Shown piece by piece: positions 404 to 57,429 of a stretch of 64,000 bases of DNA. The notes beneath the pieces were generated by a model. The model did no database searches and was not told the origin of the DNA. It saw only the letters and a list, made by a program, of their open reading frames with translations. The stretch spans positions 124,001-188,000 of IMG/VR virus record IMGVR_UViG_3300020578_000006, one strand, 5' to 3'. The translations under genes were made by a program, and so were the position numbers. Numbering within the stretch: the stretch's first letter is position 1; each line of letters begins with the position of its first letter.

Positions 404-870
404 TAGTTAAAGTAGTATCCTGACTCAGATAAAACACCCTTTAAGGATACTCCTGTAATATTTAACGTCGGAACATTAATTATCATTATAATATTGTATT
501 GATTATTATCATTATCTAGCTGTATGTTAAGCTTTTGTAGTTGTATTCTAGGTTCAAATTTTTGTATTCCTTTAAGAATAGCCTCTCCTATAATTTGGCC
601 TTGTGTCTCTGAAACAGGTGTGAATAGATATTGTGTTAAATTTAAGCCATATAAAGGTGTAAGAATTTTTTGGCCAGGCATTGTTGTAAATAGATTAAAG
701 AGACTATTCTTTACCGCGCCTATATCTTCTGAAATTTGAATATCTTTTATCTCTCTGCGCTTTAAGAGTTGAGTATTCTTTGTGTAAGCGACTTTAAGAT
801 CTAATAGTAAATCCTTGTAAATAGGTGAAGATAATGGTGCGGAAATAGTATTTAAAACTATGGCTGCCAT
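403..870 (-). CDS. gp25: Baseplate wedge subunit gp25
   Basis: EDIGAVKNSLFNLFTTMPGQKILTPLYG...IQKFEPRI gp25 signature; start moved from 1059 to ATG 870, 5 nt after a TATAAATA box. Confidence 0.9.
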   Translation of the reverse strand: MAAIVLNTISAPLSSPIYKDLLLDLKVAYTKNTQLLKRREIKDIQISEDIGAVKNSLFNLFTTMPGQKILTPLYGLNLTQYLFTPVSETQGQIIGEAILKGIQKFEPRIQLQKLNIQLDNDNNQYNIIMIINVPTLNITGVSLKGVLSESGYYFN

Positions 871-875
871 AGTAT

Positions 876-883
876 TATTTATA
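876..883 (-). promoter_or_regulatory. T4-type late promoter TATAAATA (gp25)
   Basis: Exact TATAAATA, 5 nt before ATG 870. Confidence 0.8.
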
Positions 884-905
884 CGGGGATATTTGTTCCT
901 TGAAA

Positions 906-913
906 CATAAATA
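906..913 (+). promoter_or_regulatory. Late promoter CATAAATA
   Basis: 5 nt before ATG 919; divergent from the gp25 promoter. Confidence 0.7.
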
Positions 914-918
914 TAGAT

Positions 919-1521
919 ATGAATAAATTTACCGCTATCTACGAGTCTGCCATTCAACGCTACACTCGAGGTGGTTTTTTGACAGGAGATTTGGTAAAAT
1001 TTACAGAAAATGCATTTCGTGATGATTTCTTTAAAAAACAAGCGCCTAACTACATTCAAAAGGCTAAATCATTTAGCGAAAGCGGTTTAAACATAAGAGT
1101 TAGTGCTATAAAAGCAATAAGACCTACTATGCATTCTGGAAACATACAGAATGAAGCGGAATCATTTTTGGTGGATATAGTACAAGAGGTTGCACCTGGT
1201 TTATACAGAGAATTCATAACAGTACCTGCCCACGTTCTACAGCCTATCGATACCGGTATTAATCTAGCCCCAGTTCCAGATAGTCTAAAAAGACCCAATG
1301 ATACTTCTATCACACCTCACCCTGTTAGCTTGAAAGATGAAAACGAACTAATGCTTTCCCCTCACCGTCAAACACAAACAAGTGATATGGGCAACCACAA
1401 GGACTCAGAAGGTGATCGTAAGCTTAATAATGTAAATGTAAAAATACCTAGTTCACCGGCTAAAGGTGAGAACAGCCCAAGTGTAGAGAGCGGCACCCAC
1501 AGGTATCTTCCTAAGCGTTAA
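919..1521 (+). CDS. Hypothetical late protein, putative head-packaged (N-terminus MNKFTAIYE)
   Basis: 200-aa ORF with late promoter and an I-x-E site near the N-terminus. Confidence 0.6.
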   Translation: MNKFTAIYESAIQRYTRGGFLTGDLVKFTENAFRDDFFKKQAPNYIQKAKSFSESGLNIRVSAIKAIRPTMHSGNIQNEAESFLVDIVQEVAPGLYREFITVPAHVLQPIDTGINLAPVPDSLKRPNDTSITPHPVSLKDENELMLSPHRQTQTSDMGNHKDSEGDRKLNNVNVKIPSSPAKGENSPSVESGTHRYLPKR

Positions 1522-2443
1522 TTTCAGTTAACGCCAATACAAGACAATAAAAATTAATTTCTTGATCAACAACAAACGCGGATCTATACATATATTCCCC
1601 AATAGTTATCAACCATAGTTTCTTTTGTTGTTCGGATAATGAATAGTTACCCTCACAAACATTATCAAATAACGACTTCATAAGTAGACTGTAATCCCCG
1701 TGAAACGTCTCCTCATTTTCTATAACATGTTTTCTTGCATTAAATACTTTTTTACTAACAATAAACGTTATTAGTTTTATAATAAAGTCGTCCTTTACAT
1801 CAAGGGACGGTATAGTTAATATCCCTATAGTACTAAATTTTTGCAATTCATTAATACACTTTCGTATATCTGGAAAATATTTTCTAATTAACCCAATTAA
1901 CTTAACTTTATTTTCTTCATCAACTTTAATATTCTCAGCCTTTAGAATAGTATAACAACGCTTTACAACCTCTTGTAAGTTAGGCTCTAAATCTATAAAC
2001 TGGCACCTACTTTGAAGAGGTGCAATAACTTTGTGTTTGTAATTGCACGTTAAAATAAATCTACAGTGGCCGGCATATTCTTCCAATACATTTCTTAAGG
2101 AACGTTGCGCTTCAATTGAAGCCATTCCATCTATTTCATCTAGCAATACTATTTTTTTCTTACCGTTAAAACTCTTAGTTCTACTAAAACTAGTTATATC
2201 ATTTCTTACCGCGTCTATGCCTACTTCAGAGCAATTTTGATAGATGTATTCAGCCTCTAGTGTGTTAATAAGAACTTTTGATGTAGTTGTTTTGCCTATT
2301 CCTTGATGACCGCAGAACATTAAGTTAGGTATTTCATCATTCTTAATAAAAGATGTTAGTATTTTTCTAGTTTCTGAAGACAGTATAACCTCGTCTATAG
2401 TTTTAGGTCTGTATTTTTCAACCCAAAATTTATCTACATCCAT
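1511..2443 (-). CDS. gp44: Clamp loader ATPase subunit gp44 (RFC-like AAA+)
   Basis: WVEKYRP, GHQGIGKT Walker A, LLDEID Walker B, LQSRC; start set at MDVDK (2443), directly after the dUTPase stop. Confidence 0.93.
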   Translation of the reverse strand: MDVDKFWVEKYRPKTIDEVILSSETRKILTSFIKNDEIPNLMFCGHQGIGKTTTSKVLINTLEAEYIYQNCSEVGIDAVRNDITSFSRTKSFNGKKKIVLLDEIDGMASIEAQRSLRNVLEEYAGHCRFILTCNYKHKVIAPLQSRCQFIDLEPNLQEVVKRCYTILKAENIKVDEENKVKLIGLIRKYFPDIRKCINELQKFSTIGILTIPSLDVKDDFIIKLITFIVSKKVFNARKHVIENEETFHGDYSLLMKSLFDNVCEGNYSLSEQQKKLWLITIGEYMYRSAFVVDQEINFYCLVLALTEINA

Positions 2444-2444
2444 T

Positions 2445-3440: not shown

Positions 3441-4242
3441 CATCTTTTAACTGATTAAACAATAAATCTTGATTTAATTTGTTACCTTCTACGTCAACAG
3501 TAATGTTTACATTAGGAACAAACTGTAAATTATTAGAAGATGATCTAGGATTATAGTTTATGTAATACAAAATTACATTGTAAAGCTCTTTAAATTCTCC
3601 TTGTATTTTTTGTTGTATAGTGGGAGCAAGTTGTTTCATTCTTTTGAAATGCTCTGTATCAGGTATAAGGTTTTCCCCTTGAGCTTTAGTATTACTTTCT
3701 ACTTTGTTCTGAATGCTTTGAATGTTTTTTCTAAACACTAGATTAGTTTTTTTACTTAATTCAGAGTGTAAAAGTAAAGTGGCTGGGCTTATCTTATTTG
3801 ATAAAGTAGCACCATATCTAAAAGGCGAGAGAACAGATTCGCTATTAATATCACTAACAAGTTGTAATGAATCATCGAGATAGTTTTCTATTCTTGCTAA
3901 GCTTCCCATACAATCACTAAAGGATTTGTAGAATGTACCTTCACCTATTTTTATTCTTACTTGATTTTTTACTTCATCTATCGCGGTATCAAAAGTTTTT
4001 ATCCAATTAGCTGCAAATTGAGGAGACATTTTTTTCATCTGACCATCTAAATCTGCAAAAAAATCTCTTTGCGCCGTAATTACATCGTTTTGAACTTTAG
4101 TTAAATTATATTTTATACCAGTTTCTAATTCTTTAGAATAACTTTGAATAGTAGATAAAAAGTTACTTGCTTTGTTGTAAAATTCTTTTTTGTAAAAAAG
4201 ATTAATTTTGGTGAGAAACGGATCGATTGTTTGATTATTCAT
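3400..4242 (-). CDS. Hypothetical baseplate-operon protein
   Basis: 280-aa ORF coupled (ATGA overlap) to the upstream baseplate genes. Confidence 0.55.
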   Translation of the reverse strand: MNNQTIDPFLTKINLFYKKEFYNKASNFLSTIQSYSKELETGIKYNLTKVQNDVITAQRDFFADLDGQMKKMSPQFAANWIKTFDTAIDEVKNQVRIKIGEGTFYKSFSDCMGSLARIENYLDDSLQLVSDINSESVLSPFRYGATLSNKISPATLLLHSELSKKTNLVFRKNIQSIQNKVESNTKAQGENLIPDTEHFKRMKQLAPTIQQKIQGEFKELYNVILYYINYNPRSSSNNLQFVPNVNITVDVEGNKLNQDLLFNQLKDVTSSLTSQGVLKA

Positions 4243-9144: not shown

Positions 9145-9972
9145 TTACAACGTTACAGCCTCCTTCTCACTATTAAAATTGTTCAAATATATATCACACT
9201 CAAACGGGGTAAGATTATTGATTGAATTAAGATCTATTCCTAATTTAGATAATAAAAAGTATTTTTTCTTATAAAAATTTTGTGCATAAGGAATAAAAAT
9301 TGCTTTTAAAAAATCAAATAATGTGTTATCTATAATATCAAATCTTACTGAATAAAATTCTTTGAGATTCTTATCATTTTTAAGAATATGTAAAGTATTA
9401 TAAAGACTTCTATATTTTTCTAAATGCTCTTTTAATTCATTTACTACATCCACAGGAATACTGTTAAAGAATCTTATTTTTTTATCTGTAGAAAATGCCT
9501 TAGGATAATATTTTTTATTATTCATATATACTCTAAAGATGTTTTCAAAGATATAATTTTCAGTATATAAATCTTTGGATGTTTTAAATTCTATTTTTAA
9601 ATCATCTAATTCTAATGTGGGTATTTCGTCCATTCCAATTTCAGATAAATTTGTTAAAGTATCAAATAAGCTAAAAGAAGCTAAGCATGGATTATTTTGT
9701 TGATCTTTTAAATTATAATGTAACATACTAGAGATAGAACTGGCCCTTAAAAACGTCAATATAAACCATTTATCAAATTTTGTTAATTTAGAATATATTT
9801 CTTTTTGAACTAAATTTTCTAGAACTATTTCATTGAATACAGAATTAATATTCTCATTATCTTCATTTAGCATATATTTGGTTAATACTTCCAATTGATA
9901 CATTTTTAATTCTGCTAATTTAAAATAATTTTTTAAGCTAGGAACCCAGCAATTGAGATAAAAGCTATTCAT
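9145..9972 (-). CDS. Hypothetical baseplate hub assembly protein (gp26/gp51-like position)
   Basis: 275-aa ORF in the tail operon; TAATG overlap with the upstream gene. Confidence 0.45.
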   Translation of the reverse strand: MNSFYLNCWVPSLKNYFKLAELKMYQLEVLTKYMLNEDNENINSVFNEIVLENLVQKEIYSKLTKFDKWFILTFLRASSISSMLHYNLKDQQNNPCLASFSLFDTLTNLSEIGMDEIPTLELDDLKIEFKTSKDLYTENYIFENIFRVYMNNKKYYPKAFSTDKKIRFFNSIPVDVVNELKEHLEKYRSLYNTLHILKNDKNLKEFYSVRFDIIDNTLFDFLKAIFIPYAQNFYKKKYFLLSKLGIDLNSINNLTPFECDIYLNNFNSEKEAVTL

Positions 9973-10910
9973 TAAAAGAATCCAGCAGGGTTAAGAACGC
10001 GAGTGGCAGCGTCTTGTAAAGGTGATACTTGGGGAGTATAGCTACCATTAATAATGCCGCTGACGTTGTTAATAATATCGGCAAGAGGAAAATACATACT
10101 GTTTTCTACTGTATAATTTGTGTACGCAAAATTTACATCATAAATTATTGCTTGGTCTGGCTCTCTGTAATCTAAATTTATATTGTTAATAAGTGTAGGT
10201 ACACAATTATAAAACTTATATACTTTTCTAGGTATTTGGCTTATGTTTTGATAGCTTCTCGTATAGCAAAGCAGTGTAATATTACACTTAATATTTCTGT
10301 AATCCTTTTGACCAGGTATATCGTTTGGGTATGCAACCATTCCTAAATGGCTAGCCAAAATAACCCAAGGCCTGAATACATTATCTACAATACTAGTATT
10401 GGTTTCAAGAAATCCTAATCTTAGTGGCGTTTGCGAATATCCTGTTCTATTTTCTGACATAACACCTTGCACAAACCCTCTGCTTTTACCGGTAGTACCA
10501 ATTGTTATGTCTCGAGTTGTAAAGGTTTCCTGGGGTATCATCGCAGTTTGGGCGAACACACACCCAATAACTTTTTGAAATGGAAAACTTGTTAATAATA
10601 TTTTTGCTTGATCAATATCATACCCTCTCTTACCTCCATCTGTTCGTTCCAATCTTTGTAATAGTTGAGAATTTAGCGCTCTCGGAAAAGAGTCAATAAC
10701 TGCGATCCATTGCGATTGTAAAGGTATACTTGTAAGCCAGCTTTGAAGTTGAAGTAGGAAATAATCTCTTGTACTGATTAGCGGTACACCGGGTATATTA
10801 AAACCCAGTAAATTAGTAATTTGAGGTTCAGATAAAGGGTTAGTACCGCGGCCGATACCTAAAACGTTATTAGTAAGACCTTGAAAGGCATTAGTAATAG
10901 GGTTATTCAT
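9972..10910 (-). CDS. Tail-tube-fold baseplate protein (gp54-like tube initiator)
   Basis: LRLGFLETN...FRPW...YKFYNCVP...YDVNFAY gp19/gp54-family pattern; own late promoter. Confidence 0.6.
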   Translation of the reverse strand: MNNPITNAFQGLTNNVLGIGRGTNPLSEPQITNLLGFNIPGVPLISTRDYFLLQLQSWLTSIPLQSQWIAVIDSFPRALNSQLLQRLERTDGGKRGYDIDQAKILLTSFPFQKVIGCVFAQTAMIPQETFTTRDITIGTTGKSRGFVQGVMSENRTGYSQTPLRLGFLETNTSIVDNVFRPWVILASHLGMVAYPNDIPGQKDYRNIKCNITLLCYTRSYQNISQIPRKVYKFYNCVPTLINNINLDYREPDQAIIYDVNFAYTNYTVENSMYFPLADIINNVSGIINGSYTPQVSPLQDAATRVLNPAGFF

Positions 10911-10916
10911 CCCTAT

Positions 10917-10924
10917 TATTTATA
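10917..10924 (-). promoter_or_regulatory. Late promoter TATAAATA
   Basis: 6 nt before ATG 10910. Confidence 0.8.
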
Positions 10925-10936: not shown

Positions 10937-11482
10937 TTATGACTTACGAATGAAGTAATGATATGCCAAACCAACATCAAATGTAACGACATCACCCTTA
11001 CCACTAGAGAAATCATACTTAATACCACCAACTTCTCTAATACTAACACCAACAAGCTGATATTGAGCTACTTTTTCCATCTGTGAATCTAGTTGAACTA
11101 AGTCAATAGTGCTAGATTGGGTAGGTGTAAAATAGTTACCAGTGCTGTTAGTATCATTAAATGTATCGCGAGTCCAATCTTCAAACTTCTGTCTAAGATT
11201 GTTTTTAGCATCATTATAGAATGTTAATTGATAGTTTGCACTGTTGGGGTAGTTTACAACACCTGGAATATTGAAATTTAACCCCATGTAAGTTGTTGTA
11301 ACATTATTAATGGCACGCGCAGGTAGAGAAGCAGATCTAGCATACACTAGATCATCTTCACCAAATGTCTGTGTTGTGCCGCCTGGAGATATACTAAGCA
11401 CTCTAAAATGAATATCGCGTTGAAAGTCACGCGCAGAAGCTACTCTGTAAAAATCAGCAATTAATTGTTTTACGGCTGCCAT
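10937..11482 (-). CDS. gp19: Tail tube protein gp19
   Basis: ARSASLP...YMGLNFNIPG...LRQKFEDW...FDVGLAYHYF; directly downstream of gp18. Confidence 0.88.
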   Translation of the reverse strand: MAAVKQLIADFYRVASARDFQRDIHFRVLSISPGGTTQTFGEDDLVYARSASLPARAINNVTTTYMGLNFNIPGVVNYPNSANYQLTFYNDAKNNLRQKFEDWTRDTFNDTNSTGNYFTPTQSSTIDLVQLDSQMEKVAQYQLVGVSIREVGGIKYDFSSGKGDVVTFDVGLAYHYFIRKS

Positions 11483-11489
11483 AATGTAT

Positions 11490-11497
11490 TATTTATT
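11490..11497 (-). promoter_or_regulatory. Late promoter AATAAATA (gp19)
   Basis: 7 nt before ATG 11482. Confidence 0.65.
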
Positions 11498-11509: not shown

Positions 11510-13900
11510 TTACGCTAGTAACTCCTGGAAGTTTTGACTTGTACGGGTAGCATAGAAGCTTACCAAGATAAACTCTGCTGTGCGTACTGGCTTGAGGTAG
11601 ATGTCCACCTTTAGCTCATTATTGTCAATTACATCAGGTGTATTGTTACGCTCATCACATATGATAAGGTAGTCATAAACACCTTCTGTATTCTTAGCAT
11701 TTTCAAAGATTGGTGTAATTGTATTTACAACTTGGGTACGCGTAAATAGTGTGTTAGGTTCAAACACGAAGTATTTAACCGTATCGCGTGTTGCAATTTC
11801 AAGATTTAAGAACAATCTACGCACATTAATACGATCAAACGCACTAGGTTTCTTTAAAAGTGTTTTCTGACCGTATATTACAAATCCTTCTACAGGGAAG
11901 AAAGCAACTGGATTTAAGCCAATCTTGTAAAGTTGATCTCTTTGCTTCATCTTTGGATATACACCAAGATCATTAACCCCTACTAATACCCCACGAGTAA
12001 ACCCAGCAGGGGCAAACCATGGCTGGAAGTTAGCATCTGTATTCCCCATAGCAGCAGCTGCAAAGCCACTAAATGGTACCCAAACTTGTCTATTTGTTAC
12101 TGGATCTAATACTTGAGCAACATTGGCGTATGTACAAGCATAGCTGGTATCGGTTAGTCCAAACTGATGTCTTAGCGGCCAGTAAATATGTTGACTAAAG
12201 TTAGTATTTGAAAATCCAGCTGCAGATGGATTTGGATCTAAACCAGCATTTGGACCAAATAGCTTAGCTGTATTGATAATCTTATTATTGTCACCCTGGA
12301 CAAAAATGTGTCTTAAGGCATCTAGAATAACCAAGAAATCTTTTCTTTGATTTTGAGCTTGATTAACAAATATACTAGCTACTGCATTGTAGTTAGCTCT
12401 AATAGCCAAGCCTTCTTCAGTAAGATTTTCACTGTTTGTTGTGTAAAACGCGCTTAATGCATTAAATGGTGTATTATCAATGTACGGACCGCACGCAGAA
12501 AGAGGTTTTCCAGCAAGTACTGATTGATTTGCAACATGCGCAAATATACTACCTAAGCCAGCTTCACAAGCAATATTAATTGGATGAAGATCTGGGTTTT
12601 CGACTAATTCAAACACTCTTTCAAGTTTTTGAGGTAGATTGCCGATGTCTTTATTAATAGCAATGGTATCAGTATAAACACCGAGGGGGAACAAGGAGTT
12701 TGTTGCACCGTTATCTGTTAAAGCTTGTTGTGCGTCTGCTGATGCAACACCAACACGGGTAATGTAGCTTGTGTTAGTATCTACAAAGCCAGGTACGTTG
12801 AAAGGTGATACTAGTCTTGGAGAGAGCATTCTTACCTTCTTCGTAGGAATACCATCACCGCCAAGCCATGTTGTACGGTTTTTGTTACTCAAGAAAGGAT
12901 TAACAAGAACTCTGATATTGGGTGAGTTTTGAGTGACGCTACCTAAGAAAAAGCTCTTTGCTGGTCCACCATTAGAATCAGCAATTTGTCTGTGATAGTC
13001 TAGTGAACCGACATAGCTCTCAGTAAGAACATAATCAAGAGCAATTACATCGGGTGAGAATACAGATTGACGTAGTTTAAATATTCCTAATGACAATGTA
13101 TCGTCGTACTCACGGGGGCTTAGATCGTAGTTAGAGATATTTTCCATTACTTCGCTAACGCTTGTACCGTCACCAAACTTAGTTGCACTTAGGGCAAAAT
13201 TTAATCTAGGTCTTGGAATATTTACGTAATTATAAACTGCTGTACTATTTGTACCGATACCCTGTACACCTAAAACACCATCAAAGGGAGTAGCAGGGTT
13301 GTTATTATTGTTATCAGTTAGTGCAACATAATAACCTTCAAACTTGTTGTTAACAGAAGTTTGAGATCTATTTAAAATAATTAGCCCCGCGCCTCCTAGT
13401 TTATCAAAAGTAAACGAAGGGGGTGATGTTAAAACTGTACTCGGATCATCAACCCAATTGATATCATCGTTTAATAAAGCTTGATATTGTTCTATGCTTA
13501 ATTCAAGATGAGTTGGTTTTCCAAACATGTAAACTGTATTTTCTGATAAACTCGTATTGATAGTGCCATAAGGCGCGGCCGGGTAAACTAAAGCACTGTA
13601 TTTCCATTCTGCAAAACCTTCACCTTTAGCAGTGCCGTAAGGTAGTCTGGAAACCTTTAGTTGAACTGGTGACTGTAGAACAGCCTTTACTGTATGGTAG
13701 AAATATCTTTCAGCCGCATTTGTTGGTGTACCGTAAATTTGTTCAAATTCGCTAATACTTGTAGGTTGAAGTACTTCGTCAACAGGTCCTTGATTAGAAA
13801 ACCCTGTGATAAAAACACTTGTACCTTGATTAACAACTGGTCTTAGTGTTAAATCTACTTCTCTAATTTCTACACCTGGACTTTGTATTGTTCTTGCCAT
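11510..13900 (-). CDS. gp18: Tail sheath protein gp18
   Basis: SPGVEIREVDLT N-terminus; PWFAPAG, SAFDRINVRRLF, FEPN and IYLKPVRTAEFI sheath motifs. Confidence 0.96.
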   Translation of the reverse strand: MARTIQSPGVEIREVDLTLRPVVNQGTSVFITGFSNQGPVDEVLQPTSISEFEQIYGTPTNAAERYFYHTVKAVLQSPVQLKVSRLPYGTAKGEGFAEWKYSALVYPAAPYGTINTSLSENTVYMFGKPTHLELSIEQYQALLNDDINWVDDPSTVLTSPPSFTFDKLGGAGLIILNRSQTSVNNKFEGYYVALTDNNNNNPATPFDGVLGVQGIGTNSTAVYNYVNIPRPRLNFALSATKFGDGTSVSEVMENISNYDLSPREYDDTLSLGIFKLRQSVFSPDVIALDYVLTESYVGSLDYHRQIADSNGGPAKSFFLGSVTQNSPNIRVLVNPFLSNKNRTTWLGGDGIPTKKVRMLSPRLVSPFNVPGFVDTNTSYITRVGVASADAQQALTDNGATNSLFPLGVYTDTIAINKDIGNLPQKLERVFELVENPDLHPINIACEAGLGSIFAHVANQSVLAGKPLSACGPYIDNTPFNALSAFYTTNSENLTEEGLAIRANYNAVASIFVNQAQNQRKDFLVILDALRHIFVQGDNNKIINTAKLFGPNAGLDPNPSAAGFSNTNFSQHIYWPLRHQFGLTDTSYACTYANVAQVLDPVTNRQVWVPFSGFAAAAMGNTDANFQPWFAPAGFTRGVLVGVNDLGVYPKMKQRDQLYKIGLNPVAFFPVEGFVIYGQKTLLKKPSAFDRINVRRLFLNLEIATRDTVKYFVFEPNTLFTRTQVVNTITPIFENAKNTEGVYDYLIICDERNNTPDVIDNNELKVDIYLKPVRTAEFILVSFYATRTSQNFQELLA

Positions 13901-13901
13901 A

Positions 13902-13937
13902 TTAGATTAAACCTCCAAGAGAAACTTTTTGACTCAT
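13902..13937 (-). other. 11-aa upstream mini-ORF MSQKVSLGGLI containing GGAGGT, ending 1 nt before the gp18 ATG
   Basis: ATG AGT CAA AAA GTT TCT CTT GGA GGT TTA ATC TAA T ATG read directly; 8 nt after a CATAAATA box. Confidence 0.45.
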
Positions 13938-44549: not shown

Positions 44550-44557
44550 AATAAATA
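44550..44557 (+). promoter_or_regulatory. Late promoter AATAAATA
   Basis: 5 nt before ATG 44563. Confidence 0.65.
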
Positions 44558-44562
44558 ATATT

Positions 44563-45483: not shown

Positions 45484-45491
45484 TATAAATA
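45484..45491 (+). promoter_or_regulatory. Late promoter TATAAATA
   Basis: 4 nt before GTG 45496. Confidence 0.8.
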
Positions 45492-45495
45492 ACAA

Positions 45496-46665
45496 GTGGC
45501 TTACATATCCCTAAAAGACCTATATTTTGAAGACGTAGCCGGCATAACTGTGCCTCCGCTGCCTAGACAACAGGTAAATACACCCCCGGTCAAAGTTTTT
45601 GTGCCGGGTGATGAATATGTACCTCAAACACCGTGGACAGAATACGATATATCTCCAGATTTATTTCAAAAAACAGCAGGTGGGGATAAGGAAGGTACTG
45701 GTAGAGGAGAATACAGTATAGCATGTATATTGTATGGGTTCAAGACTAAGGAACAAGTGGATAAAGCATCTGGTAGAATTATACAAGGCGGGGGAGCTTC
45801 TTTTGACGTGGTAGGACCAGATAAACGCAAGTATGAGGTAAAAGAATTAACTAAAGCTGTACGTACAGGAACGGAAGGAACCGGGGTTTTTACAGATATC
45901 CTTAATTCGACAATAGAATTGTTAGATGCTATACTAAAGGAATTTAATACGCTAGACGCCCAGGGTAAGCAGACCATAAACAATATGATTCTAAATAGCA
46001 ATACAGTAAAAAGCACTATTCTTAACAGAAAAAGTCAAAAGGGACATTTTGACGCTATTAAAGACAGGTGGAGCTTAGATGAATATTTAAATGACATAAA
46101 GCGTAAAGCCCCAAGAGAGCTCTCTAAAGGTATTCTTATTTCTCCTATTTTAAATTTAGGTCAATATAAAGAAGAGCGCCCTTACGTAATTTTTTCCTTA
46201 AAACAATTAGTTGATGTATTAAACGAGATTGCCTCTACACAAGTCGCAACAGGCAATGAAGAAGGTACACCTAATCCAGCTGTAAGGGATATCGCCGATA
46301 CTATCAATAAACATTACAGCGTACAAGGTGATGAGAAAGAAAAAGAATTTTTCAAAAAAGAGGCAGAGAAAATTGATAGGGCATTAATTCAAAAGAGATG
46401 TAAGGAATTTAAAAAATGTACTGATGAATTATCTTTTAGAAAGCAAATAATAGCACTTAATTTGTCAGGAATGCTTAAGCTAATTCAAGATAAAACTCAA
46501 GATATTGTTGAGAATTTATTTCCAAATGATGGGTTATTTGCAGTAAACAGCCAAGGCTTTCAATACATTCCGCATAGTAAGTTAAATACCTATCTTGCTT
46601 TTGATACAATAAGTTCAGGAAGTGTAAAGATCAAGCAAAAAATAGCTAGTAATGAAACCATTTAA
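45496..46665 (+). CDS. Hypothetical late protein with PD-(D/E)xK-like nuclease motif
   Basis: GRGEY...FDVVGPDKRKYEVK pattern. Confidence 0.5.
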   Translation: MAYISLKDLYFEDVAGITVPPLPRQQVNTPPVKVFVPGDEYVPQTPWTEYDISPDLFQKTAGGDKEGTGRGEYSIACILYGFKTKEQVDKASGRIIQGGGASFDVVGPDKRKYEVKELTKAVRTGTEGTGVFTDILNSTIELLDAILKEFNTLDAQGKQTINNMILNSNTVKSTILNRKSQKGHFDAIKDRWSLDEYLNDIKRKAPRELSKGILISPILNLGQYKEERPYVIFSLKQLVDVLNEIASTQVATGNEEGTPNPAVRDIADTINKHYSVQGDEKEKEFFKKEAEKIDRALIQKRCKEFKKCTDELSFRKQIIALNLSGMLKLIQDKTQDIVENLFPNDGLFAVNSQGFQYIPHSKLNTYLAFDTISSGSVKIKQKIASNETI

Positions 46666-48636: not shown

Positions 48637-49215
48637 TTCGTTAATAGCATTTAATGCTTCAAGATTAAAAATTGTTTGGCGTAATACAGATTCTAGAACT
48701 TCTTTACCCTCACCGTACAGCATATCTCTTATTTTAGATACTATTTTTAATTCATGTGAATTTTCATCTGCATCAAACTCACCGTCTTTTCTAAATTTGT
48801 TATATTCAAGATAGTTTTTAACACTCTCAATATAGCTTGCAGCTAATGTAATTTTACTGAATACCCAAGGTTCTAAATCTTGATTGTCTTTTAGTAGATT
48901 GTAAAGAGCTTTTGACCCGTTATGAATTTTATATAGTTCGTTCTTTGCCATATCAGCTTCAGATTCACCAGAACCGGTAGAGGGTTCAACAGGGGTAATT
49001 TTTGAAGAATCTTCACAATTTTCACTATTTTTACACTGTAAACAATCTTCACCATCTTCACACCCACAAGATTTTTTATTAAGCTTTATTACTGTTGATG
49101 TGTTATTGGAAGGTACCATATTCGTGGTTTCGGCCGCGGGGCCCAGGTTTAATTCATTAACTACAATCTGGGTATAAGCTTCGGAAATTTTTTCTAATTC
49201 ACCTTTTCTGCTCAT
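48601..49215 (-). CDS. Hypothetical late protein (MSRKGELEKISE) with Cys cluster
   Basis: ORF with late promoter; EADMAKNEL...PWVFSKIT helical segment. Confidence 0.6.
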   Translation of the reverse strand: MSRKGELEKISEAYTQIVVNELNLGPAAETTNMVPSNNTSTVIKLNKKSCGCEDGEDCLQCKNSENCEDSSKITPVEPSTGSGESEADMAKNELYKIHNGSKALYNLLKDNQDLEPWVFSKITLAASYIESVKNYLEYNKFRKDGEFDADENSHELKIVSKIRDMLYGEGKEVLESVLRQTIFNLEALNAINESGNKGSAPTAN

Positions 49216-49221
49216 TTTATA

Positions 49222-49229
49222 TATTTATT
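49222..49229 (-). promoter_or_regulatory. Late promoter AATAAATA
   Basis: 6 nt before ATG 49215. Confidence 0.65.
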
Positions 49230-49231: not shown

Positions 49232-49239
49232 AATAAATA
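49232..49239 (+). promoter_or_regulatory. Late promoter AATAAATA
   Basis: 8 nt before ATG 49248. Confidence 0.6.
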
Positions 49240-49247
49240 CATAATAT

Positions 49248-49664
49248 ATGCGTAGTTACAAAGAATTTTTCTATGAACAAATACTAGGGGCTACGGAAGG
49301 TATTACTATTCAACATGTTGGAAACGTTAGAGCCACTGTAGACACTGGTAACAGCGGTTATAATGTACTTCATGCAGAAATAATTGATGGTGCAAAAGAG
49401 GGACATGTAAAATTTAAAACAGTAAACGACAAAGTGTTAGAATTGCCTGTAAAAGAGTTTATAACGGTATCCGGAAATAATAATACCAACGATAGACCAG
49501 TAGTAGAGTTAGACTGTAGCTTGGGCCAAGAACAATTTAATAAAGTTCCTTTCAGCCTTGCGGACAGAAGTCAGCAAGATACCCCTGTTCTCTTAAGTAA
49601 AGATTTTATAAAATTAAATGGCGGTGTTGTTAATGTTAATATTAACAGCGAAATTAAAAAATAA
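49248..49664 (+). CDS. Retropepsin-like aspartic protease (RimB/'ATP-dependent Zn protease' family-like)
   Basis: ATVDTG catalytic motif, RPVVEL, FSLADRS...PVLL; N-terminus MRSYKEFFYE. Confidence 0.75.
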   Translation: MRSYKEFFYEQILGATEGITIQHVGNVRATVDTGNSGYNVLHAEIIDGAKEGHVKFKTVNDKVLELPVKEFITVSGNNNTNDRPVVELDCSLGQEQFNKVPFSLADRSQQDTPVLLSKDFIKLNGGVVNVNINSEIKK

Positions 49665-52994: not shown

Positions 52995-53715
52995 TAGTCT
53001 TAACTATAGAAACTATAAACTTTAGTAGCTTGCTCCTGGTAATATCGTCTTCGGTAAAGTGAAACGTTTCAATACCATGTTCCTTGCTGTTTTCACAACT
53101 GAAAGCTTTCATAAAACTCTGAAAGCCAGATTTAGGAATATCAGATTGCAAGGAATCACCAATAACAAATAACTTACAACCCTTACCAAATCTAGTTAGA
53201 ATTGTTGTTAATTCATTATGCTCTAGATTTTGTGCCTCATCAACAATTACCACATTGTTGGAAAACGTTGCTCCTCGTAAAAAATTAACAGGTATACATT
53301 TTAAATATTCATTCTCAAAGAGTATATTAGCTATTTGCTTACCCACAAGCTCATCACATTTTTCTACTAATGGTATGCTCCATGGCTTAAACTTATCGTC
53401 TACCTCCCCCGGTAAACTACCTAGTTTTCTAGAAGCTGATTCAACAATACTCCGTATATACACAATTTCATCTGCCTTTCGCTCTTTAAGTAATGTTAAG
53501 GCAACATACACAGCAAGATATGTTTTTGAGCTTCCTGCTGGTCCATCTGCAAAAATGATGTTTGTTTTATCATCAAAAGCCTTCTCTGCAAAAGCTTTGT
53601 GATGTTCATTTAAATGAAACTTTTGATCAATTTTAAAATTTAGAAGAATATCAGACTTAATGAGTTTTTCTTCAAATTTAGCAGCCTTTCTGGCTGCTCT
53701 AGCCATCTTAGACAT
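52978..53715 (-). CDS. phoH: PhoH-family ATPase
   Basis: GPAGSSKT, LGSLPG, FLRGATF, VDEAQN, GDSLQSD, EDDITRS. Confidence 0.95.
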   Translation of the reverse strand: MSKMARAARKAAKFEEKLIKSDILLNFKIDQKFHLNEHHKAFAEKAFDDKTNIIFADGPAGSSKTYLAVYVALTLLKERKADEIVYIRSIVESASRKLGSLPGEVDDKFKPWSIPLVEKCDELVGKQIANILFENEYLKCIPVNFLRGATFSNNVVIVDEAQNLEHNELTTILTRFGKGCKLFVIGDSLQSDIPKSGFQSFMKAFSCENSKEHGIETFHFTEDDITRSKLLKFIVSIVKTIKNPS

Positions 53716-53721
53716 CTGTAT

Positions 53722-53729
53722 TATTTATT
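53722..53729 (-). promoter_or_regulatory. Late promoter AATAAATA (phoH)
   Basis: 6 nt before ATG 53715. Confidence 0.62.
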
Positions 53730-54756: not shown

Positions 54757-54764
54757 AATAAATA
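54757..54764 (+). promoter_or_regulatory. Late promoter AATAAATA
   Basis: 4 nt before GTG 54769. Confidence 0.62.
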
Positions 54765-54768
54765 ATTG

Positions 54769-55638
54769 GTGATTCTTAATAAGTTTGATAAGAAAGCAAA
54801 CGAAATTTTACAAATTTTACAAGAGAACCCTGCGGCCGCAGCGGTTGCTATACCCGCATTAACTAAAGTGGCCCCGTGGGTAGCAGGTCTTTTTTCTGTA
54901 TTAGTAGGAACCCTGGTCGGTGTGGGGGGTGGTGCTTGGGCGCCTCCATTACCGACTCCAACAGAAACAGATGTAAAACCTGAAATAGATAAAAATAAGC
55001 CTAAAACATATCCACCCTTAGTTCCTCCAATACCTTCAACTAATGCACCAGATGTAGTTGGTGGTAGTACCCCTGGGGTTTCTCCAGCACCAGATGTAGT
55101 CGGGGGTACGCCTGAAATTTCTGCACCGGCGCCAGCAGGTGTAAAAACACCTGATGCAGCACAACCAGTACCAGTAGATCAAGCAGTGCCAGTAGATCAA
55201 GCAGTTCCTGTTGATCGATCAATTACTAATACTGCACAAAATGTTGGTGCTAAAGAAAAAGAAATTGCTGTAGCCAAAGATGCTGTACAAGATAAAACGG
55301 CTGGTCAAGCACCTATCGTAGCCCCACCACCACAATTAAAATTTTCTAAAACAGGCAATTTTAAATTAGAACGTCCAGAAGAAGGGTTTCCTAACTACCA
55401 ATCACTAACACCTTATGCTATGGGACAATCCTATACTGACAACTCTAATCTATCACCTAATAGTGTGTGGAAGCAAGTTATGAAAGGTAAGCAGCCCATA
55501 GAAGAGCTTCCCGCTGATATGCAGTCCCCTGAAGAAGTGGCCCAAAGATTTAAGAAGTGGAAAGCAGATCAAAAGAAAAGAAAATACGAGGCCCCTGGTG
55601 CTTTTGGTGGTTTAGTCGGGGAACCCAATCTAGATTAA
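54769..55638 (+). CDS. Pro-rich late protein with N-terminal hydrophobic segment
   Basis: VAPWVAGLFSVLVGTLVGVGGG segment; APDVVGG and VPVDQA repeats. Confidence 0.6.
   Translation: MILNKFDKKANEILQILQENPAAAAVAIPALTKVAPWVAGLFSVLVGTLVGVGGGAWAPPLPTPTETDVKPEIDKNKPKTYPPLVPPIPSTNAPDVVGGSTPGVSPAPDVVGGTPEISAPAPAGVKTPDAAQPVPVDQAVPVDQAVPVDRSITNTAQNVGAKEKEIAVAKDAVQDKTAGQAPIVAPPPQLKFSKTGNFKLERPEEGFPNYQSLTPYAMGQSYTDNSNLSPNSVWKQVMKGKQPIEELPADMQSPEEVAQRFKKWKADQKKRKYEAPGAFGGLVGEPNLD
55171..55205 (+). repeat. Tandem 18-nt repeat (PVDQAV)
   Basis: ccagtagatcaagcagt at 55171 and 55189, followed by a degenerate third copy. Confidence 0.8.
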
Positions 55639-55658
55639 TTACAATTATATTATAAAAT
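55631..55658 (+). promoter_or_regulatory. Sigma70-type promoter TAGATT-N16-TAAAAT
   Basis: 5 nt before ATG 55664. Confidence 0.6.
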
Positions 55659-55663
55659 AAGAT

Positions 55664-56359
55664 ATGCGTATAGCTTTTAGCGGAGCCGCTTGTACAGGTA
55701 AAACAACAACAATTAGCGCCTTTTTAGCCAAATGGCCAAATTACAAGTCTCCAGAAACTTCATACAGAACATTAATATCAAATAATAAGCATAGTAAGAG
55801 AACAGATAAAAAGATTCAACGTAGTATTTTGCAGTTTATGGTAGATCAACAAAAAGGATATACCTTACATGATAATATTGTTTATGATAGGTGTGGGCTT
55901 GATAACGTAGTATATTCGCTATGGTGCCATGATAAGGGTATAAAAGGGTTTAACAAGCAATATATAGATGAATCAATAGAACTTGTAAAAGAGAGTATGA
56001 GAACCTTGGATATTATATTTCTATCAACCAGAGATTTAATGGGACCTATAGTCAATAATAATATAAGAGAAGTTGACCCAGAGTTTGTTATGGAAACTGA
56101 TAATATTTTTAGGGCTATTTACAGTCAGCTTCTATCAACAGGTGCTTCACCCTTCTTTCCTCCTCACGATAGCCCGGGGCTAATTGAACTTAAAGGGACA
56201 ACAGAAGAAAGAATAGATCTTATTAGTATGTATATTACCCCAGAAGGTAGTATGTATGGTGAAGAACAAAGCCTAGTAAATATGGATGAAATCGCCAAAA
56301 TGGAAAGCCTTCTAAGAGAACAAAAAGGGTTAGCTGCTAAAGAAAAAGGTATTTTGTAA
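55664..56359 (+). CDS. P-loop nucleotide kinase (dNMP/thymidylate kinase or NadR-type AAA_28)
   Basis: IAFSGAACTGKTT, IVYDRCGLD. Confidence 0.75.
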   Translation: MRIAFSGAACTGKTTTISAFLAKWPNYKSPETSYRTLISNNKHSKRTDKKIQRSILQFMVDQQKGYTLHDNIVYDRCGLDNVVYSLWCHDKGIKGFNKQYIDESIELVKESMRTLDIIFLSTRDLMGPIVNNNIREVDPEFVMETDNIFRAIYSQLLSTGASPFFPPHDSPGLIELKGTTEERIDLISMYITPEGSMYGEEQSLVNMDEIAKMESLLREQKGLAAKEKGIL

Positions 56360-56365
56360 TAAATA
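56358..56365 (+). promoter_or_regulatory. Late promoter AATAAATA
   Basis: 5 nt before ATG 56371. Confidence 0.62.
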
Positions 56366-56370
56366 TCTTA

Positions 56371-56601
56371 ATGTTATTTGATAAAAATTACAATTTTATA
56401 ATGGAAAGTTTTAAGTCAATTAAAACCATTCATAGACTGTTTTATCCAAGAAACTTTAATCTATCTGAAGAATTTATAAATTCTTTTCGAAAAGAATATG
56501 CAAGGTTAAAGTCAATGAATATTGATGATAGAAGAATTTTACAGAAAATGATTAAGGCGCTACCCTTTCATAAGGATAACGTAAATATTAATACTCTATA
56601 A
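56371..56601 (+). CDS. Small hypothetical late protein (MLFDKNYNFIME)
   Basis: 76-aa ORF with late promoter. Confidence 0.55.
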   Translation: MLFDKNYNFIMESFKSIKTIHRLFYPRNFNLSEEFINSFRKEYARLKSMNIDDRRILQKMIKALPFHKDNVNINTL

Positions 56602-57415
56602 TAACAACCCCGGCTGCTCCACTACCACCAGCACCGCTTGCAGAACCTCCACCACCGCCGGCTCCCGTATTATCTGAACCGTTTTGACCGCTCACGTTAC
56701 TACCATTACCACCGCGACCGGCTCCTGAGCCCATAAACCCTGGTCCGCCTCGTCCGCCTGCAGCAAACGCCGCAGTACTCCCCGCAATACCATTTTCACC
56801 AGAAGAGCCTGCTAAAGGTATATCACCACCAGACCCTGCTAATCCCCCTGCCCCACCGGCGACCGCACCTCCAGCAGACCCAACAGTGCCACCAGAACCT
56901 CCCGGTGCTATAACCTGTGTTTCTCCTGTAACCGTAAAGGTGGACTGACCGCCTGCTGCAGCTGCAGCACCACCGGCGCCAACCACATAAGAATATGTTT
57001 TACCTCTTACATTTGTAAAATATTTTATGTTTGTACTGCCCCCGCCACCACCACCTCCAGCTCCTGAGCTGCTGGAGCCGCCTCCACCTCCCCCGCCACC
57101 TACTATAGTCACCTTAATATTGTTAACACCGGCGGGAAATGTTACACCGGATGCTGACCCCCCACCAGTAGGTGCGTATCTAATAACAGTGGTAAACCCT
57201 GGTTGGCGAGACTCTACCGTAGCACTCAAGGTATTAACCCGACTACTAATAGTGGCTACAGATGTATAAAAACTAGTATTGTTTGGCCCTATTACAAAAT
57301 CTTTAAAATCTATAATGTTTGTGCCTGTACTATTTTCAACAATAAGATAATTGCCGTTGACAATTTCCTCTATTTGGTTTAACTCTTTAATATTAACCTT
57401 GTTAAACGTCGACAT
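56588..57415 (-). CDS. Glycine-rich tail fibre/baseplate appendage protein
   Basis: VTIVGGGGGGG...YSYVVGAGG...GGSGAAGVVIIEY glycine-rich domain; late promoter. Confidence 0.75.
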   Translation of the reverse strand: MSTFNKVNIKELNQIEEIVNGNYLIVENSTGTNIIDFKDFVIGPNNTSFYTSVATISSRVNTLSATVESRQPGFTTVIRYAPTGGGSASGVTFPAGVNNIKVTIVGGGGGGGGSSSSGAGGGGGGGSTNIKYFTNVRGKTYSYVVGAGGAAAAAGGQSTFTVTGETQVIAPGGSGGTVGSAGGAVAGGAGGLAGSGGDIPLAGSSGENGIAGSTAAFAAGGRGGPGFMGSGAGRGGNGSNVSGQNGSDNTGAGGGGGSASGAGGSGAAGVVIIEY

Positions 57416-57421
57416 ATCAGT

Positions 57422-57429
57422 TATTTATT
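57422..57429 (-). promoter_or_regulatory. Late promoter AATAAATA
   Basis: 6 nt before ATG 57415. Confidence 0.62.

What the first reader, a model, noticed from the sequence alone, without database searches (positions are those of the whole stretch)
870..57429. Late genes also appear leaderless, and downstream genes are started by stop/start overlaps
Of 24 NATAAATA late boxes directly upstream of genes, 22 lie 4-8 nt before the start codon. T4 late transcription begins about 5-6 nt after this box, so these mRNAs would have no or almost no leader. Genes lacking their own promoter are mostly joined by ATGA, TAATG or TGATG overlaps (403, 4239-42, 5744-47, 6136-39, 7641-44, 9972, 17742-45, 19277-80, 22969-72, 23644, 26313-16, 27026-29, 42163, 42811, 44151-54, 47275-78, 61496-99, 62932-35). 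The phage appears to avoid SD initiation almost completely.
Basis: partly seen in the sequence, partly recalled or inferred. Interest (0 to 1): 0.6.

Follow-up and report, generated by a model that had tools for sequence, protein, structure and literature searches.

The report
Promoters abutting start codons: leaderless phage genes
In this lake-water relative of phage T4, late and early promoters sit so close to the start codons that about 40% of genes should be made from messenger RNAs with no leader and no ribosome-binding site. This layout is conserved across its uncultured relatives but is absent from T4 itself.

Summary
The window has 24 ATAAATA boxes within 12 nt upstream of long ORFs, and 21 lie 4-8 nt before ATG or GTG. 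ATAAATA-N4-6-RTG occurs 18 times against 3.7 expected. All 18 listed stop/start overlaps are real.

Across the 229.7-kb genome, 64 genes carry a TAAATA box 4-7 nt upstream. Another 57 carry a sigma-70-type TTG/TAnnnT promoter whose -10 ends about 6 nt upstream. A gp55-like late sigma factor is encoded. Annotated box-bearing genes are mostly tail, packaging and lysis genes; the sigma-70-type set is replication and nucleotide metabolism.

Box, spacing and R-TG start are conserved in relatives down to 42-58% protein identity. T4 and cyanophage Syn9 keep 12-35-nt SD-bearing leaders. Pelagibacter phage HTVC008M shares the late-gene layout.

The leaderless reading is well supported by sequence, but no RNA data exist. 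"Avoids SD almost completely" is overstated: 26% of starts without such a promoter have a correctly spaced SD core, against 7% of decoys. The tail sheath gene has a conserved GGAGG. Overlap coupling is as frequent in T4, so it is ordinary. I class this as a new variant of known kinds.

The parts
868..882 (-). Late box ATAAATA + 5 nt + ATG; gene 403-870, baseplate wedge-like
907..921 (+). Late box + 5 nt + ATG; gene 919-1521. Divergent partner of 870, with 48 nt between the two start codons
2929..2942 (+). Late box + 4 nt + ATG; gene 2940-3440
10908..10923 (-). Late box + 6 nt + ATG; tube-like gene 9972-10910. Box conserved in relatives, where GTG starts are common
11480..11496 (-). Late box + 7 nt + ATG; tail tube gene 10937-11482. 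TAAATA conserved in 45 distinct relatives
14574..14587 (-). Late box + 4 nt + GTG; tube paralogue 13992-14576. The box lies inside the 3' end of the terminase gene
16304..16319 (-). CTAAATA + 6 nt + ATG; large terminase gene 14561-16306
16324..16338 (+). Late box + 5 nt + ATG; gene 16336-17280. Only 29 nt separate it from the divergent terminase start
16669..16683 (+). Late box + 5 nt + in-frame internal ATG inside gene 16336-17280; possible shorter 199-aa product
17332..17346 (+). Late box + 5 nt + GTG; gene 17344-17745. A terminator-like hairpin plus T-run ends 17 nt before the GTG
20098..20111 (-). Late box + 4 nt + GTG; gene 19720-20100
20128..20142 (+). Late box + 5 nt + ATG; gene 20140-20553. 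Divergent pair with 20100, 39-nt spacer
21794..21809 (-). Late box + 6 nt + ATG; gene 21611-21796
43784..43800 (+). Late box + 7 nt + ATG; gene 43798-44154
44551..44565 (+). Late box + 5 nt + ATG; gene 44563-45447
45485..45498 (+). Late box + 4 nt + GTG; gene 45496-46665. The first in-frame ATG is 163 codons downstream
49213..49228 (-). Late box + 6 nt + ATG; gene 48601-49215
49233..49250 (+). Late box + 8 nt + ATG; gene 49248-49664. Divergent pair with 49215, 32-nt spacer
53713..53728 (-). Late box + 6 nt + ATG; PhoH-like gene 52978-53715
54758..54771 (+). Late box + 4 nt + GTG; gene 54769-55638
56359..56373 (+). Late box + 5 nt + ATG; gene 56371-56601
57413..57428 (-). Late box + 6 nt + ATG; tail-fibre-like gene 56588-57415
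40060..40677 (-). gp55-like late sigma factor, next to gp47- and gp46-like genes (SbcC-like match for 37208-39016); T4 has the same 55/47/46 neighbourhood
   Evidence: tblastn with T4 gp55, E 8e-8; PHROG_234, E 1.8e-24
35716..35765 (-). Example of the early class: TTGCTA-N16-TATAAT + 6 nt + GTG of the DNA polymerase gene 33127-35718. The arrangement is conserved in relatives
13898..13952 (-). Exception: tail sheath start (ATG 13900). Late box at 13946-13952, then 8 nt, then an 11-codon mini-ORF at 13902-13937 (MSQKVSLGGLI). The mini-ORF contains GGAGG (13912-13916) and stops 1 nt before the sheath ATG
4239..4242 (-). ATGA stop/start overlap. The same type occurs at 5744-47, 6136-39, 7641-44, 17742-45(+), 19277-80, 26313-16, 27026-29, 39007-10, 44151-54(+), 47275-78(+), 61496-99(+) and 62932-35(+)
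9970..9974 (-). TAATG overlap. The same type occurs at 403, 23644 and 42163; TGATG at 42811(+); GTGA at 22969-72

Best explanation
The window belongs to a deep-branching T4-like myovirus from lake water (229.7 kb, 34.5% GC).

Proposed mechanism, all steps inferred:
1. Promoters are placed so that RNA polymerase starts at, or within 1-2 nt of, the first base of the start codon. Late genes use a gp55-type box, (A/C)TAAATA, 4-6 nt upstream. Early genes use a sigma-70-type TTGnnn-N16-TAnnnT with the -10 hexamer ending about 6 nt upstream.
2. The first cistron of each unit is therefore translated from a leaderless 5'-AUG or 5'-GUG mRNA with no SD.
3. Following cistrons are reached mainly by termination-reinitiation at ATGA, TAATG or near-abutting junctions.
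4. About a quarter of these later cistrons, including the tail sheath gene, also have a conventional SD.

Shown by sequence: the motif geometry, its statistics, its conservation, the gp55 gene, the split by gene function, the lack of SD at these starts, and the contrast with T4 and Syn9.

Inferred only: the transcription start points and the mode of ribosome binding.
For: 1. Geometry. Sixty-four genes have TAAATA 4-7 nt before ATG/GTG (spacers 4/5/6/7 nt = 22/25/15/2). Fifty-seven have TTG-N15-19-TAnnnT with the -10 ending 6 nt upstream in 36. Decoy rates at internal RTGs are 0.3% and 1.5%.
2. The T4 late box occupies -13..-6 (PMC2988020), so a 5-nt spacer puts the start-codon purine at +1. 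For a sigma-70 -10 hexamer at -12..-7 (general knowledge, not checked here), a 6-nt spacer does the same.
3. A gp55 homologue is encoded.
4. Function split. Box-bearing genes with a PHROG name: baseplate wedge, three tube paralogues, terminase, tail fibres, sheath stabiliser, peptidase, PhoH-like, radical SAM. Sigma-70-type genes: dUTPase, primase, SSB, DNA polymerase, GTP cyclohydrolase, QueD, QueE.
5. Position -1 is T in 64% and 54% of the two classes (34% at coupled starts). Starts are ATG or GTG, almost never TTG. GTG accounts for 20 of 121 starts here against 4 of 159 elsewhere, p = 4.5e-5. This fits a pyrimidine(-1)/purine(+1) transcription start.
6. No SD: core 4-mers occur at 5% and 0% of these starts.
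7. Eleven divergent gene pairs in the window have only 21-60 nt between their start codons, which leaves no room for leaders.
8. Conservation. The box is kept before the tube gene in 45 distinct relatives while flanks diverge. The same holds for two tube paralogues, with ATG/GTG interchange. The DNA polymerase -10 + 6 nt + RTG is kept in relatives of 58-100% identity (one 79% locus showed no clear -10) and at 7 nt in a 46% relative, whereas a 30% relative has an SD leader.
9. Controls. T4 boxes lie 12-35 nt from starts and 58-60% of T4 starts have an SD core. Syn9 boxes lie 14-39 nt upstream. Pattern counts against the reversed control: this genome 46 vs 12, relatives 22 vs 2 and 25 vs 3, HTVC008M 11 vs 4, Syn9 4 vs 4, T4 3 vs 3.
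Against: - No transcript data: all 20 runs that hold the sequence are DNA metagenomes.
- My gene model is home-made, and the choice of start among candidates was partly guided by the motifs. The motif-first counts do not depend on it.
- Spacers of 4 and 6-7 nt need flexible start-site choice or leave 1-2-nt leaders. In Caulobacter each added 5' nucleotide roughly halves leaderless translation, and non-AUG starts are poor there (bioRxiv 10.1101/2020.05.06.081141).
- No gp45 clamp was detected, and gp33 was not searched for.
- Predicted folding of the first 40 nt does not differ between classes.
- Only two terminator-like hairpins were found just upstream of such promoters, so read-through transcripts covering these starts probably also exist.
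Confidence: 0.75

Rival explanations
1. The TAAATA-N4-7 element is not a promoter here. It is an A/U-rich, non-SD ribosome-loading element (S1-type or Kozak-like) read on longer transcripts that start further upstream.
For: The sequence just upstream of all starts is A/T-rich and G-poor. About half of the box-bearing genes follow a same-strand gene within 10-67 nt, so read-through RNA is plausible. Few terminators were seen.
Against: The motif sits at only 22% of genes and separates cleanly by gene function. It equals the T4 late box, and gp55 is present. The parallel class has a full -35/-10 pair at the same distance, which an RBS model cannot explain. TTG starts are avoided while GTG is enriched. 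ATAAATA is depleted elsewhere in the genome. If these boxes are not the late promoters, no other late-promoter candidates are visible: TATAAATA is not above its control count genome-wide, 35 vs 33.
Confidence: 0.1
2. The boxes are true promoters, but the leaderless transcripts contribute little protein. Most translation comes from longer polycistronic RNAs, on which these starts are reached by reinitiation, 70S scanning or distant SD-like sequences.
For: Many tube-gene relatives keep GGAG or AGGA just 5' of the box, about 13 nt from the ATG. Some relatives replace the leaderless layout with a short SD leader, for example TAAATAtaatGGAGtaa ATG. The sheath gene uses a leader with GGAGG.
Against: Eleven divergent pairs in the window and many unit-first genes have no upstream same-strand gene to supply such RNA. 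SD cores are absent from 95-100% of promoter-adjacent starts. The exact spacing to the start codon would not need to be conserved under this model.
Confidence: 0.1
3. Chance, or an artefact of calling starts: in an AT-rich genome, AT-rich words fall near ATGs.
For: The genome is 65% A+T, and starts were chosen by a simple model.
Against: Shuffles gave 3.7 against 18 observed. Composition-matched permutations gave 2-12% against 47%. T4 (36% GC in the stretch used) and Syn9 show no excess. The arrangement is conserved in relatives.
Confidence: 0.02

Closest known systems
Phage T4 late transcription (gp55/gp33/gp45, TATAAATA box)
   Same: The same box sequence, here relaxed at its first two bases to (A/C)TAAATA. 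A gp55 homologue is present, next to gp47- and gp46-like genes as in T4. Boxes precede virion and packaging genes, on both strands.
   Different: In T4 the box lies 12-35 nt (mostly 23-28) before the start codon, and the leader carries an SD. Here it lies 4-7 nt before the start and no SD is present. No gp45-like clamp was detectable by sequence.
Pelagibacter phage HTVC008M (cultured T4-like pelagimyophage that encodes bS21)
   Same: At least ten genes in its first 50 kb have TAAATA exactly 5-6 nt before the annotated ATG; the ATAAATA form occurs 11 times genome-wide against 4 in the control. It has similar G+C and also encodes bS21.
   Different: In HTVC008M 44% of annotated starts have an SD core. 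The starts printed for its first 50 kb show SD-bearing leaders rather than a -10 hexamer abutting the ATG (its early promoters were not mapped). Core proteins are not close: the best DNA polymerase and terminase matches to any GenBank phage are 30-38%. I found no paper that describes this layout for HTVC008M.
Leaderless-rich bacteria (Deinococcus-Thermus, Actinobacteria) and, from memory, Thermus phages phiYS40 and P23-45
   Same: A -10 element directly adjacent to the ORF gives 5'-AUG/GUG mRNAs for a large share of genes (D. deserti 47-60%, PMC4007540; Deinococcus-Thermus survey, PMC12340547; mycobacteria with abundant GUG leaderless starts, PMC4633059). I recall that phiYS40 middle and late transcripts are mostly leaderless (Sevostyanova et al. 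2007, J Mol Biol 366:420; the paper could not be opened).
   Different: Here the late class uses a T4-type phage sigma factor and box, in an AT-rich T4-like genome from a lake. The host is unknown.
Cyanomyoviruses (Syn9, S-PM2): NATAAATA late promoters
   Same: The same relaxed late-box consensus (PMC2984593). These phages give the nearest GenBank matches for DNA polymerase and terminase.
   Different: In the Syn9 stretch examined, boxes lie 14-39 nt before the starts, and the genome shows no excess of box-N4-6-RTG.
Translational coupling by stop/start overlap (ATGA, TAATG)
   Same: Eighty-three junctions have the start within -8..+5 nt of the upstream stop; 35 are ATGA.
   Different: Only the SD content differs from the ordinary case: 30% of coupled starts have an SD core here, against 53% of coupled starts in T4.

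Membership tests
T4-type gp55-dependent late promoters | TATAAATA-like box | tested here: met
   ATAAATA or CTAAATA before 64 genes. The box is depleted elsewhere in the genome and conserved in relatives.
T4-type gp55-dependent late promoters | Phage-encoded gp55 late sigma factor | tested here: met
   Window 40060-40677(-): tblastn with T4 gp55, E 8e-8; PHROG_234 'late sigma transcription factor', E 1.8e-24.
T4-type gp55-dependent late promoters | gp45 sliding clamp as activator, and gp33 co-activator | tested here: inconclusive
   No match to T4 gp45, PF09116 or PF02916 in the genome. A gp44-like clamp loader is present at 1511-2443. gp33 was not searched for.
T4-type gp55-dependent late promoters | Box precedes late (virion, packaging, lysis) genes | tested here: met
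   Baseplate wedge, tube, terminase, fibres, sheath stabiliser and peptidase genes carry the box. No replication gene does.
T4-type gp55-dependent late promoters | Transcription starts about 6 nt after the box and depends on gp55 | not testable with these tools
   No RNA runs hold this sequence.
Leaderless mRNA | Transcript 5' end at, or within a few nt of, the start codon | not testable with these tools
   Inferred only, from promoter-to-start spacing.
Leaderless mRNA | Promoter -10-type element 4-8 nt upstream of the ORF (the in-silico criterion used for Deinococcus-Thermus and Actinobacteria) | tested here: met
   121 of 293 genes, with decoy rates of 0.3-1.5%.
Leaderless mRNA | No SD, and an AUG or GUG as first codon | tested here: met
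   SD core at 5% and 0% of these starts.
Termination-reinitiation coupling | Start codon overlaps or abuts the upstream stop | tested here: met
83 junctions genome-wide and 23 in the window.
Termination-reinitiation coupling | Downstream translation depends on upstream translation | not testable with these tools
   Needs reporter fusions with premature stop codons.
SD-led initiation | GGAG/GAGG/AGGA 5-10 nt upstream of the start, above background | tested here: met
   Met only for a minority: 41 of 159 starts without an adjacent -35/-10-type or late-box promoter, against 7% of decoys, with a peak at -12..-10. The sheath GGAGG is conserved.

The most novel reading that the evidence does not exclude
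A whole clade of abundant freshwater T4-like phages, and for late genes the marine pelagiphage HTVC008M, may have moved to leaderless translation as their main mode of expression. The ribosomal protein bS21 that these phages encode may be the factor that retunes host ribosomes towards 5'-AUG/GUG or SD-less phage messages during late infection. In this genome the bS21 gene itself sits 4 nt behind a TAAATA box. That would give phage bS21 a concrete, testable function.
Probability: 0.2. Interest if true: 0.85.

Novelty: new variant of a known kind. Interest (0 to 1): 0.62.

Why it matters
T4 late transcription and leaderless translation are both well studied, but they are not known together. In T4 and in the cyanophage examined, late messages carry SD leaders.

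A clade of T4-like phages common in lake metagenomes appears to place promoters of both temporal classes directly against the start codon. This would imply three things:
- Their unknown hosts translate 5'-AUG and 5'-GUG messages efficiently.
- Standard gene callers and promoter scans will mis-set starts and miss promoters in these genomes.
- gp55-type polymerase start-site choice sets the reading frame directly.

The same late-gene layout in the cultivable HTVC008M/Pelagibacter system makes the idea testable at the bench. The co-occurring phage bS21 gene gives a specific hypothesis for why phages carry that ribosomal protein.

Tried and rejected
- RNA evidence. The look-up of sequencing runs returned only lake-water DNA metagenomes. 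Read laying was therefore not used, because contigs cannot show transcript ends.
- DNA similarity to GenBank phages: none. The best protein matches are 30-38%, so there is no cultured close relative.
- Host. A genome-contig scan with the phage bS21 found nothing. The host stays unknown. The sigma-70-type TTGAnn/TATAAT early promoters argue against a Bacteroidota-type promoter; this rests on my own knowledge of the TAnnTTTG consensus.
- Initiator tRNA. The two phage tRNA-Met genes do not have the three G-C pairs next to the anticodon loop, so there is no phage initiator tRNA.
- 5' folding energy of the first 40 nt: no difference between classes, so it is uninformative.
- Terminators just upstream of promoter-adjacent starts: only two by my strict rule. 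This is useful as an anecdote for 17344, not as statistics.
- '-10 only' starts without a -35: 13 genes against an 11% decoy rate, which is not significant. I did not count them as leaderless.
- gp45 clamp: not found.
- Literature. Searches on leaderless plus T4-like, cyanophage, pelagiphage or bS21 returned only citations of GeneMarkS-2 or unrelated work. The phiYS40 paper could not be opened.
- The large protein searches, structure tools and other genetic codes were not needed. No contig looked human.

Full report
**What the window is.** The window is bases 124,001-188,000 of a 229,717-bp IMG/VR virus record, with 34.5% G+C. It encodes:
- a gp43-type DNA polymerase, tail sheath, large terminase, gp46-like nuclease, helicases and a DnaB-like helicase;
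- a gp44-like clamp loader and a T4 baseplate protein;
- tail tube paralogues and a baseplate wedge protein;
- a gp55-like late sigma factor at 40060-40677(-).

The best GenBank phage matches for polymerase and terminase are only 30-38% identical; they are cyanophages, Caulobacter phage Cr30 and Sinorhizobium phage phiM9. The sequence is held at full length by about 20 lake-water DNA metagenomes and by no RNA run. It is therefore a deep-branching T4-like myovirus of a lake, and its host is unknown.

**Checking the observation.**
- The window has 32 ATAAATA copies.
- Twenty-four lie within 12 nt upstream of a start codon that opens an ORF of at least 50 codons, and 21 lie at 4-8 nt.
- ATAAATA-N4-6-RTG occurs 18 times against 3.67 +/- 1.91 in shuffles.
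- Genome-wide, ATAAATA is the rarest of all 21 permutations of its letters (102 against 145-278 copies). Yet 47% of its copies sit 3-8 nt before a long ORF, against 2-12% for non-overlapping permutations.
- The conserved core is TAAATA, preceded by A (47 cases) or C (17 cases). Seventy-five copies lie 4-7 nt before ATG or GTG.

**A second class.** The upstream listings show a second set of genes with TTGAtt-N16-TATAAT whose -10 hexamer ends 6 nt before ATG or GTG. Fifty-two such sites occur, against 3-11 for scrambled -35 words, with a sharp peak at 6 nt.

**Classification of gene starts.** I used a home-made model of 293 genes. The classes are:

| Class | Definition | Genes | Decoy rate |
|---|---|---|---|
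| L | TAAATA 4-7 nt before ATG/GTG | 64 | 0.3% |
| E | TTG / TAnnnT promoter, -10 ending near the start | 57 | 1.5% |
| C | start within -8..+5 nt of the upstream stop | 83 | n/a |
| M | -10 hexamer only | 13 | 11% (not significant) |
| O | other | 76 | n/a |

In the window the counts are L 21, E 16, C 23, M 3 and O 17.

**Why these are read as promoters that give leaderless messages.**
1. The T4 late box occupies -13..-6 (PMC2988020). A 5-nt spacer therefore places the first base of the start codon at +1. The observed spacers are 4, 5 and 6 nt in 22, 25 and 15 genes.
2. The late sigma factor is present.
3. Gene function splits cleanly between the classes. L genes with a PHROG name are baseplate wedge, three tube paralogues, terminase, several fibre proteins, a sheath stabiliser, a peptidase, PhoH-like and a radical SAM protein. 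E genes are dUTPase, primase, SSB, DNA polymerase, GTP cyclohydrolase, QueD and QueE.
4. Position -1 is T in 64% (L) and 54% (E) of cases, against 34% at coupled starts. The start codon is ATG or GTG and essentially never TTG. GTG is enriched, 20 of 121 against 4 of 159, p = 4.5e-5. This is the pyrimidine(-1)/purine(+1) preference of transcription starts, and it is hard to explain for an internal ribosome-binding element.
5. SD cores are absent from these starts.
6. Eleven divergent gene pairs in the window have only 21-60 nt between their two start codons. For example, 29 nt lie between the terminase start and gene 16336.
7. At 17344 a hairpin plus T-run ends 17 nt before the GTG, and the box lies in between.

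**Comparative evidence.**
- IMG/VR holds many relatives.
- The box before the tube gene is kept in 45 distinct relatives of 58-100% protein identity, at 5-9 nt, while the surrounding intergenic sequence changes.
- The two tube paralogues keep box-N4-6-RTG with ATG/GTG interchange down to about 42-56% identity.
- In 41 relatives with at most 63% tube identity, 162 of 469 TAAATA copies lie 4-7 nt before a long-ORF start.
- The polymerase gene keeps TATAAT or TATACT + 6 nt + GTG or ATG in relatives of 58-100% identity (one 79% locus showed no clear -10), and 7 nt in a 46% relative. A 97% relative has ATG where this phage has GTG. A 30% relative has a normal tataat...aaaggagtaca ATG leader.

**Controls in known phages.**

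| Genome | Box-to-start distance | ATAAATA-N4-6-RTG, observed vs reversed control |
|---|---|---|
| This genome | 4-7 nt | 46 vs 12 |
| Two large relatives | not examined separately (their tube-region loci are in the set) | 22 vs 2 and 25 vs 3 |
| HTVC008M | 5-6 nt at about ten genes in the first 50 kb | 11 vs 4 |
| Syn9 | 14-39 nt in the stretch examined | 4 vs 4 |
| T4 | 12-35 nt, mostly 23-28 | 3 vs 3 |

In T4, 58-60% of starts carry an SD core. In HTVC008M, 44% of starts keep an SD core.

The mean anti-SD pairing energy upstream of starts is at background: -1.7 against -1.65 at random positions and -5.14 in T4. That average hides a minority. GGAG, GAGG or AGGA beginning at -17..-8 occurs at 30% of coupled starts and 21% of other starts, against 7% of internal-ATG decoys, with a peak at -12..-10. 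Roughly 30 genes more than chance predicts therefore use an SD.

The clearest case is the tail sheath gene. Its late box at 13946-13952 lies 8 nt before an 11-codon mini-ORF (13902-13937, MSQKVSLGGLI). The mini-ORF contains GGAGG and ends 1 nt before the sheath ATG. Box, mini-ORF frame, SD and abutting stop are kept in 17 distinct relatives of 71-100% identity. More distant relatives (≤66% identity) put a TAAATA box 5-12 nt before the sheath ATG instead.

Stop/start coupling accounts for about half of the genes without an adjacent -35/-10-type or late-box promoter. It is no more frequent than in T4, where 30 of 83 starts are coupled. What differs is that fewer coupled starts carry an SD: 30% here against 53% in T4.

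**Mechanism proposed.** RNA polymerase starts at the purine of the start codon. It carries the phage late sigma at late boxes and the host primary sigma at early promoters. The 5'-terminal AUG or GUG is bound directly by ribosomes, as described for other leaderless messages (PMC10491246; PMC4007540; PMC4633059). Downstream cistrons are read by reinitiation at overlapping or abutting stop/start signals, helped by an SD in about a quarter of cases. The abundance of GUG resembles mycobacterial leaderless messages rather than those of Caulobacter. This may say something about the host's ribosomes, but I could not identify the host.

**Caveats.** No transcript ends were seen. Start choice in my gene model is partly guided by the motifs, although the motif-first counts and the comparative data are independent of it. 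Read-through transcripts probably also cover many of these starts. No gp45 clamp was found.

**Novelty.** Leaderless-rich genomes are known (Deinococcus-Thermus, Actinobacteria). From memory, the Thermus phage phiYS40 has mostly leaderless middle and late transcripts. T4-type late promoters are also known. My searches found no description of T4-type late boxes abutting start codons, nor of a T4-like phage with both temporal classes leaderless. I rate it a new variant of known kinds.

**Link to bS21.** The phage encodes ribosomal protein bS21 outside the window (G000:39317-39520), behind GTAAATA + 4 nt + ATG. One large relative and HTVC008M also encode bS21; Syn9 does not. Loss of bS21 changes how the anti-SD is held and favours leaderless messages in E. 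coli (PMC10491246). Phage bS21 has been proposed to bias initiation towards phage messages (PMC9723584). A link between phage bS21 and the leaderless layout is therefore plausible but untested.

Noticed in passing
G000:C1:39317-39520 (-), outside the window (locus L091:1474-1677): The phage encodes a ribosomal protein bS21 homologue of 67 aa (PF01165, 28.2 bits, above the cut-off). Its ATG lies 4 nt after GTAAATA, so it looks like a late leaderless gene. A 108-kb relative (G001) and HTVC008M also carry bS21, but without an adjacent box. Syn9 has none.
   Followed up: partly
window 13902-13952 (-): A conserved 10-11-codon mini-ORF (MSQKVSLGGLI) lies between a late box and the tail sheath ATG. 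It contains the sheath's GGAGG and stops 1-5 nt before the ATG. The frame is kept in 17 distinct relatives despite substitutions and a one-codon length change. It may be a near-leaderless leader peptide that couples into sheath translation.
   Followed up: partly
window 16669-16683 (+), inside gene 16336-17280: An in-frame internal ATAAATA + 5 nt + ATG could give a shorter 199-aa C-terminal product of a strongly codon-biased 314-aa gene of unknown function. Internal in-frame starts are known in T4 genes 17, 21 and 49.
   Followed up: no
window-wide, e.g. 2891, 18838, 25646, 33096, 35718, 42558, 43254, 50648, 52341, 53775, 57476: Early-type promoters (TTGAtt-N16-TATAAT) end 6 nt before ATG or GTG of replication and nucleotide-metabolism genes. 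The early class therefore looks leaderless too, and this is conserved for the DNA polymerase gene in relatives.
   Followed up: yes
window 35718, 14576, 17344, 20100, 45496, 54769, 21581, 29323, 60085: GTG starts are concentrated at promoter-adjacent genes (20 of 121 against 4 of 159 elsewhere), and mostly at 4-nt spacers among the late boxes. Close relatives swap ATG and GTG at the same position.
   Followed up: partly
Pelagibacter phage HTVC008M, NC_020484 (locus L093): A cultured marine T4-like phage has TAAATA exactly 5-6 nt before the annotated ATG of at least ten genes in its first 50 kb. I found no mention of this in the searchable literature.
   Followed up: partly
relatives' loci L011-L083, upstream of the tube gene (window 11482 equivalent): Many relatives keep GGAG or AGGA immediately 5' of the late box, about 13 nt from the ATG. 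That is too far for a normal SD. It may serve on read-through transcripts.
   Followed up: no
window 9972-10910, 10937-11482, 13992-14576 (-): Three tail-tube (PHROG_45) paralogues flank the sheath gene, and each has its own late box.
   Followed up: no
window 49992-50648, 52341-52994, 53775-54521; also 30238-32740: GTP cyclohydrolase, QueD-like and QueE-like genes, plus an amidotransferase-like gene starting MCGIFG, suggest a 7-deazaguanine pathway and possibly DNA modification.
   Followed up: no
G000:C1:7195-23732, outside the window: Eight tRNA genes (Glu-UUC, Met x2, Leu-UAA, Arg-UCU, Thr-UGU, Gln-UUG, Ile-UAU) mostly read A-ending codons. This hints that the host has a higher G+C than the phage. 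Neither tRNA-Met looks like an initiator.
   Followed up: partly
whole genome: ATAAATA is the rarest of the 21 words with its composition (102 copies against 145-278). This suggests selection against stray late boxes.
   Followed up: yes
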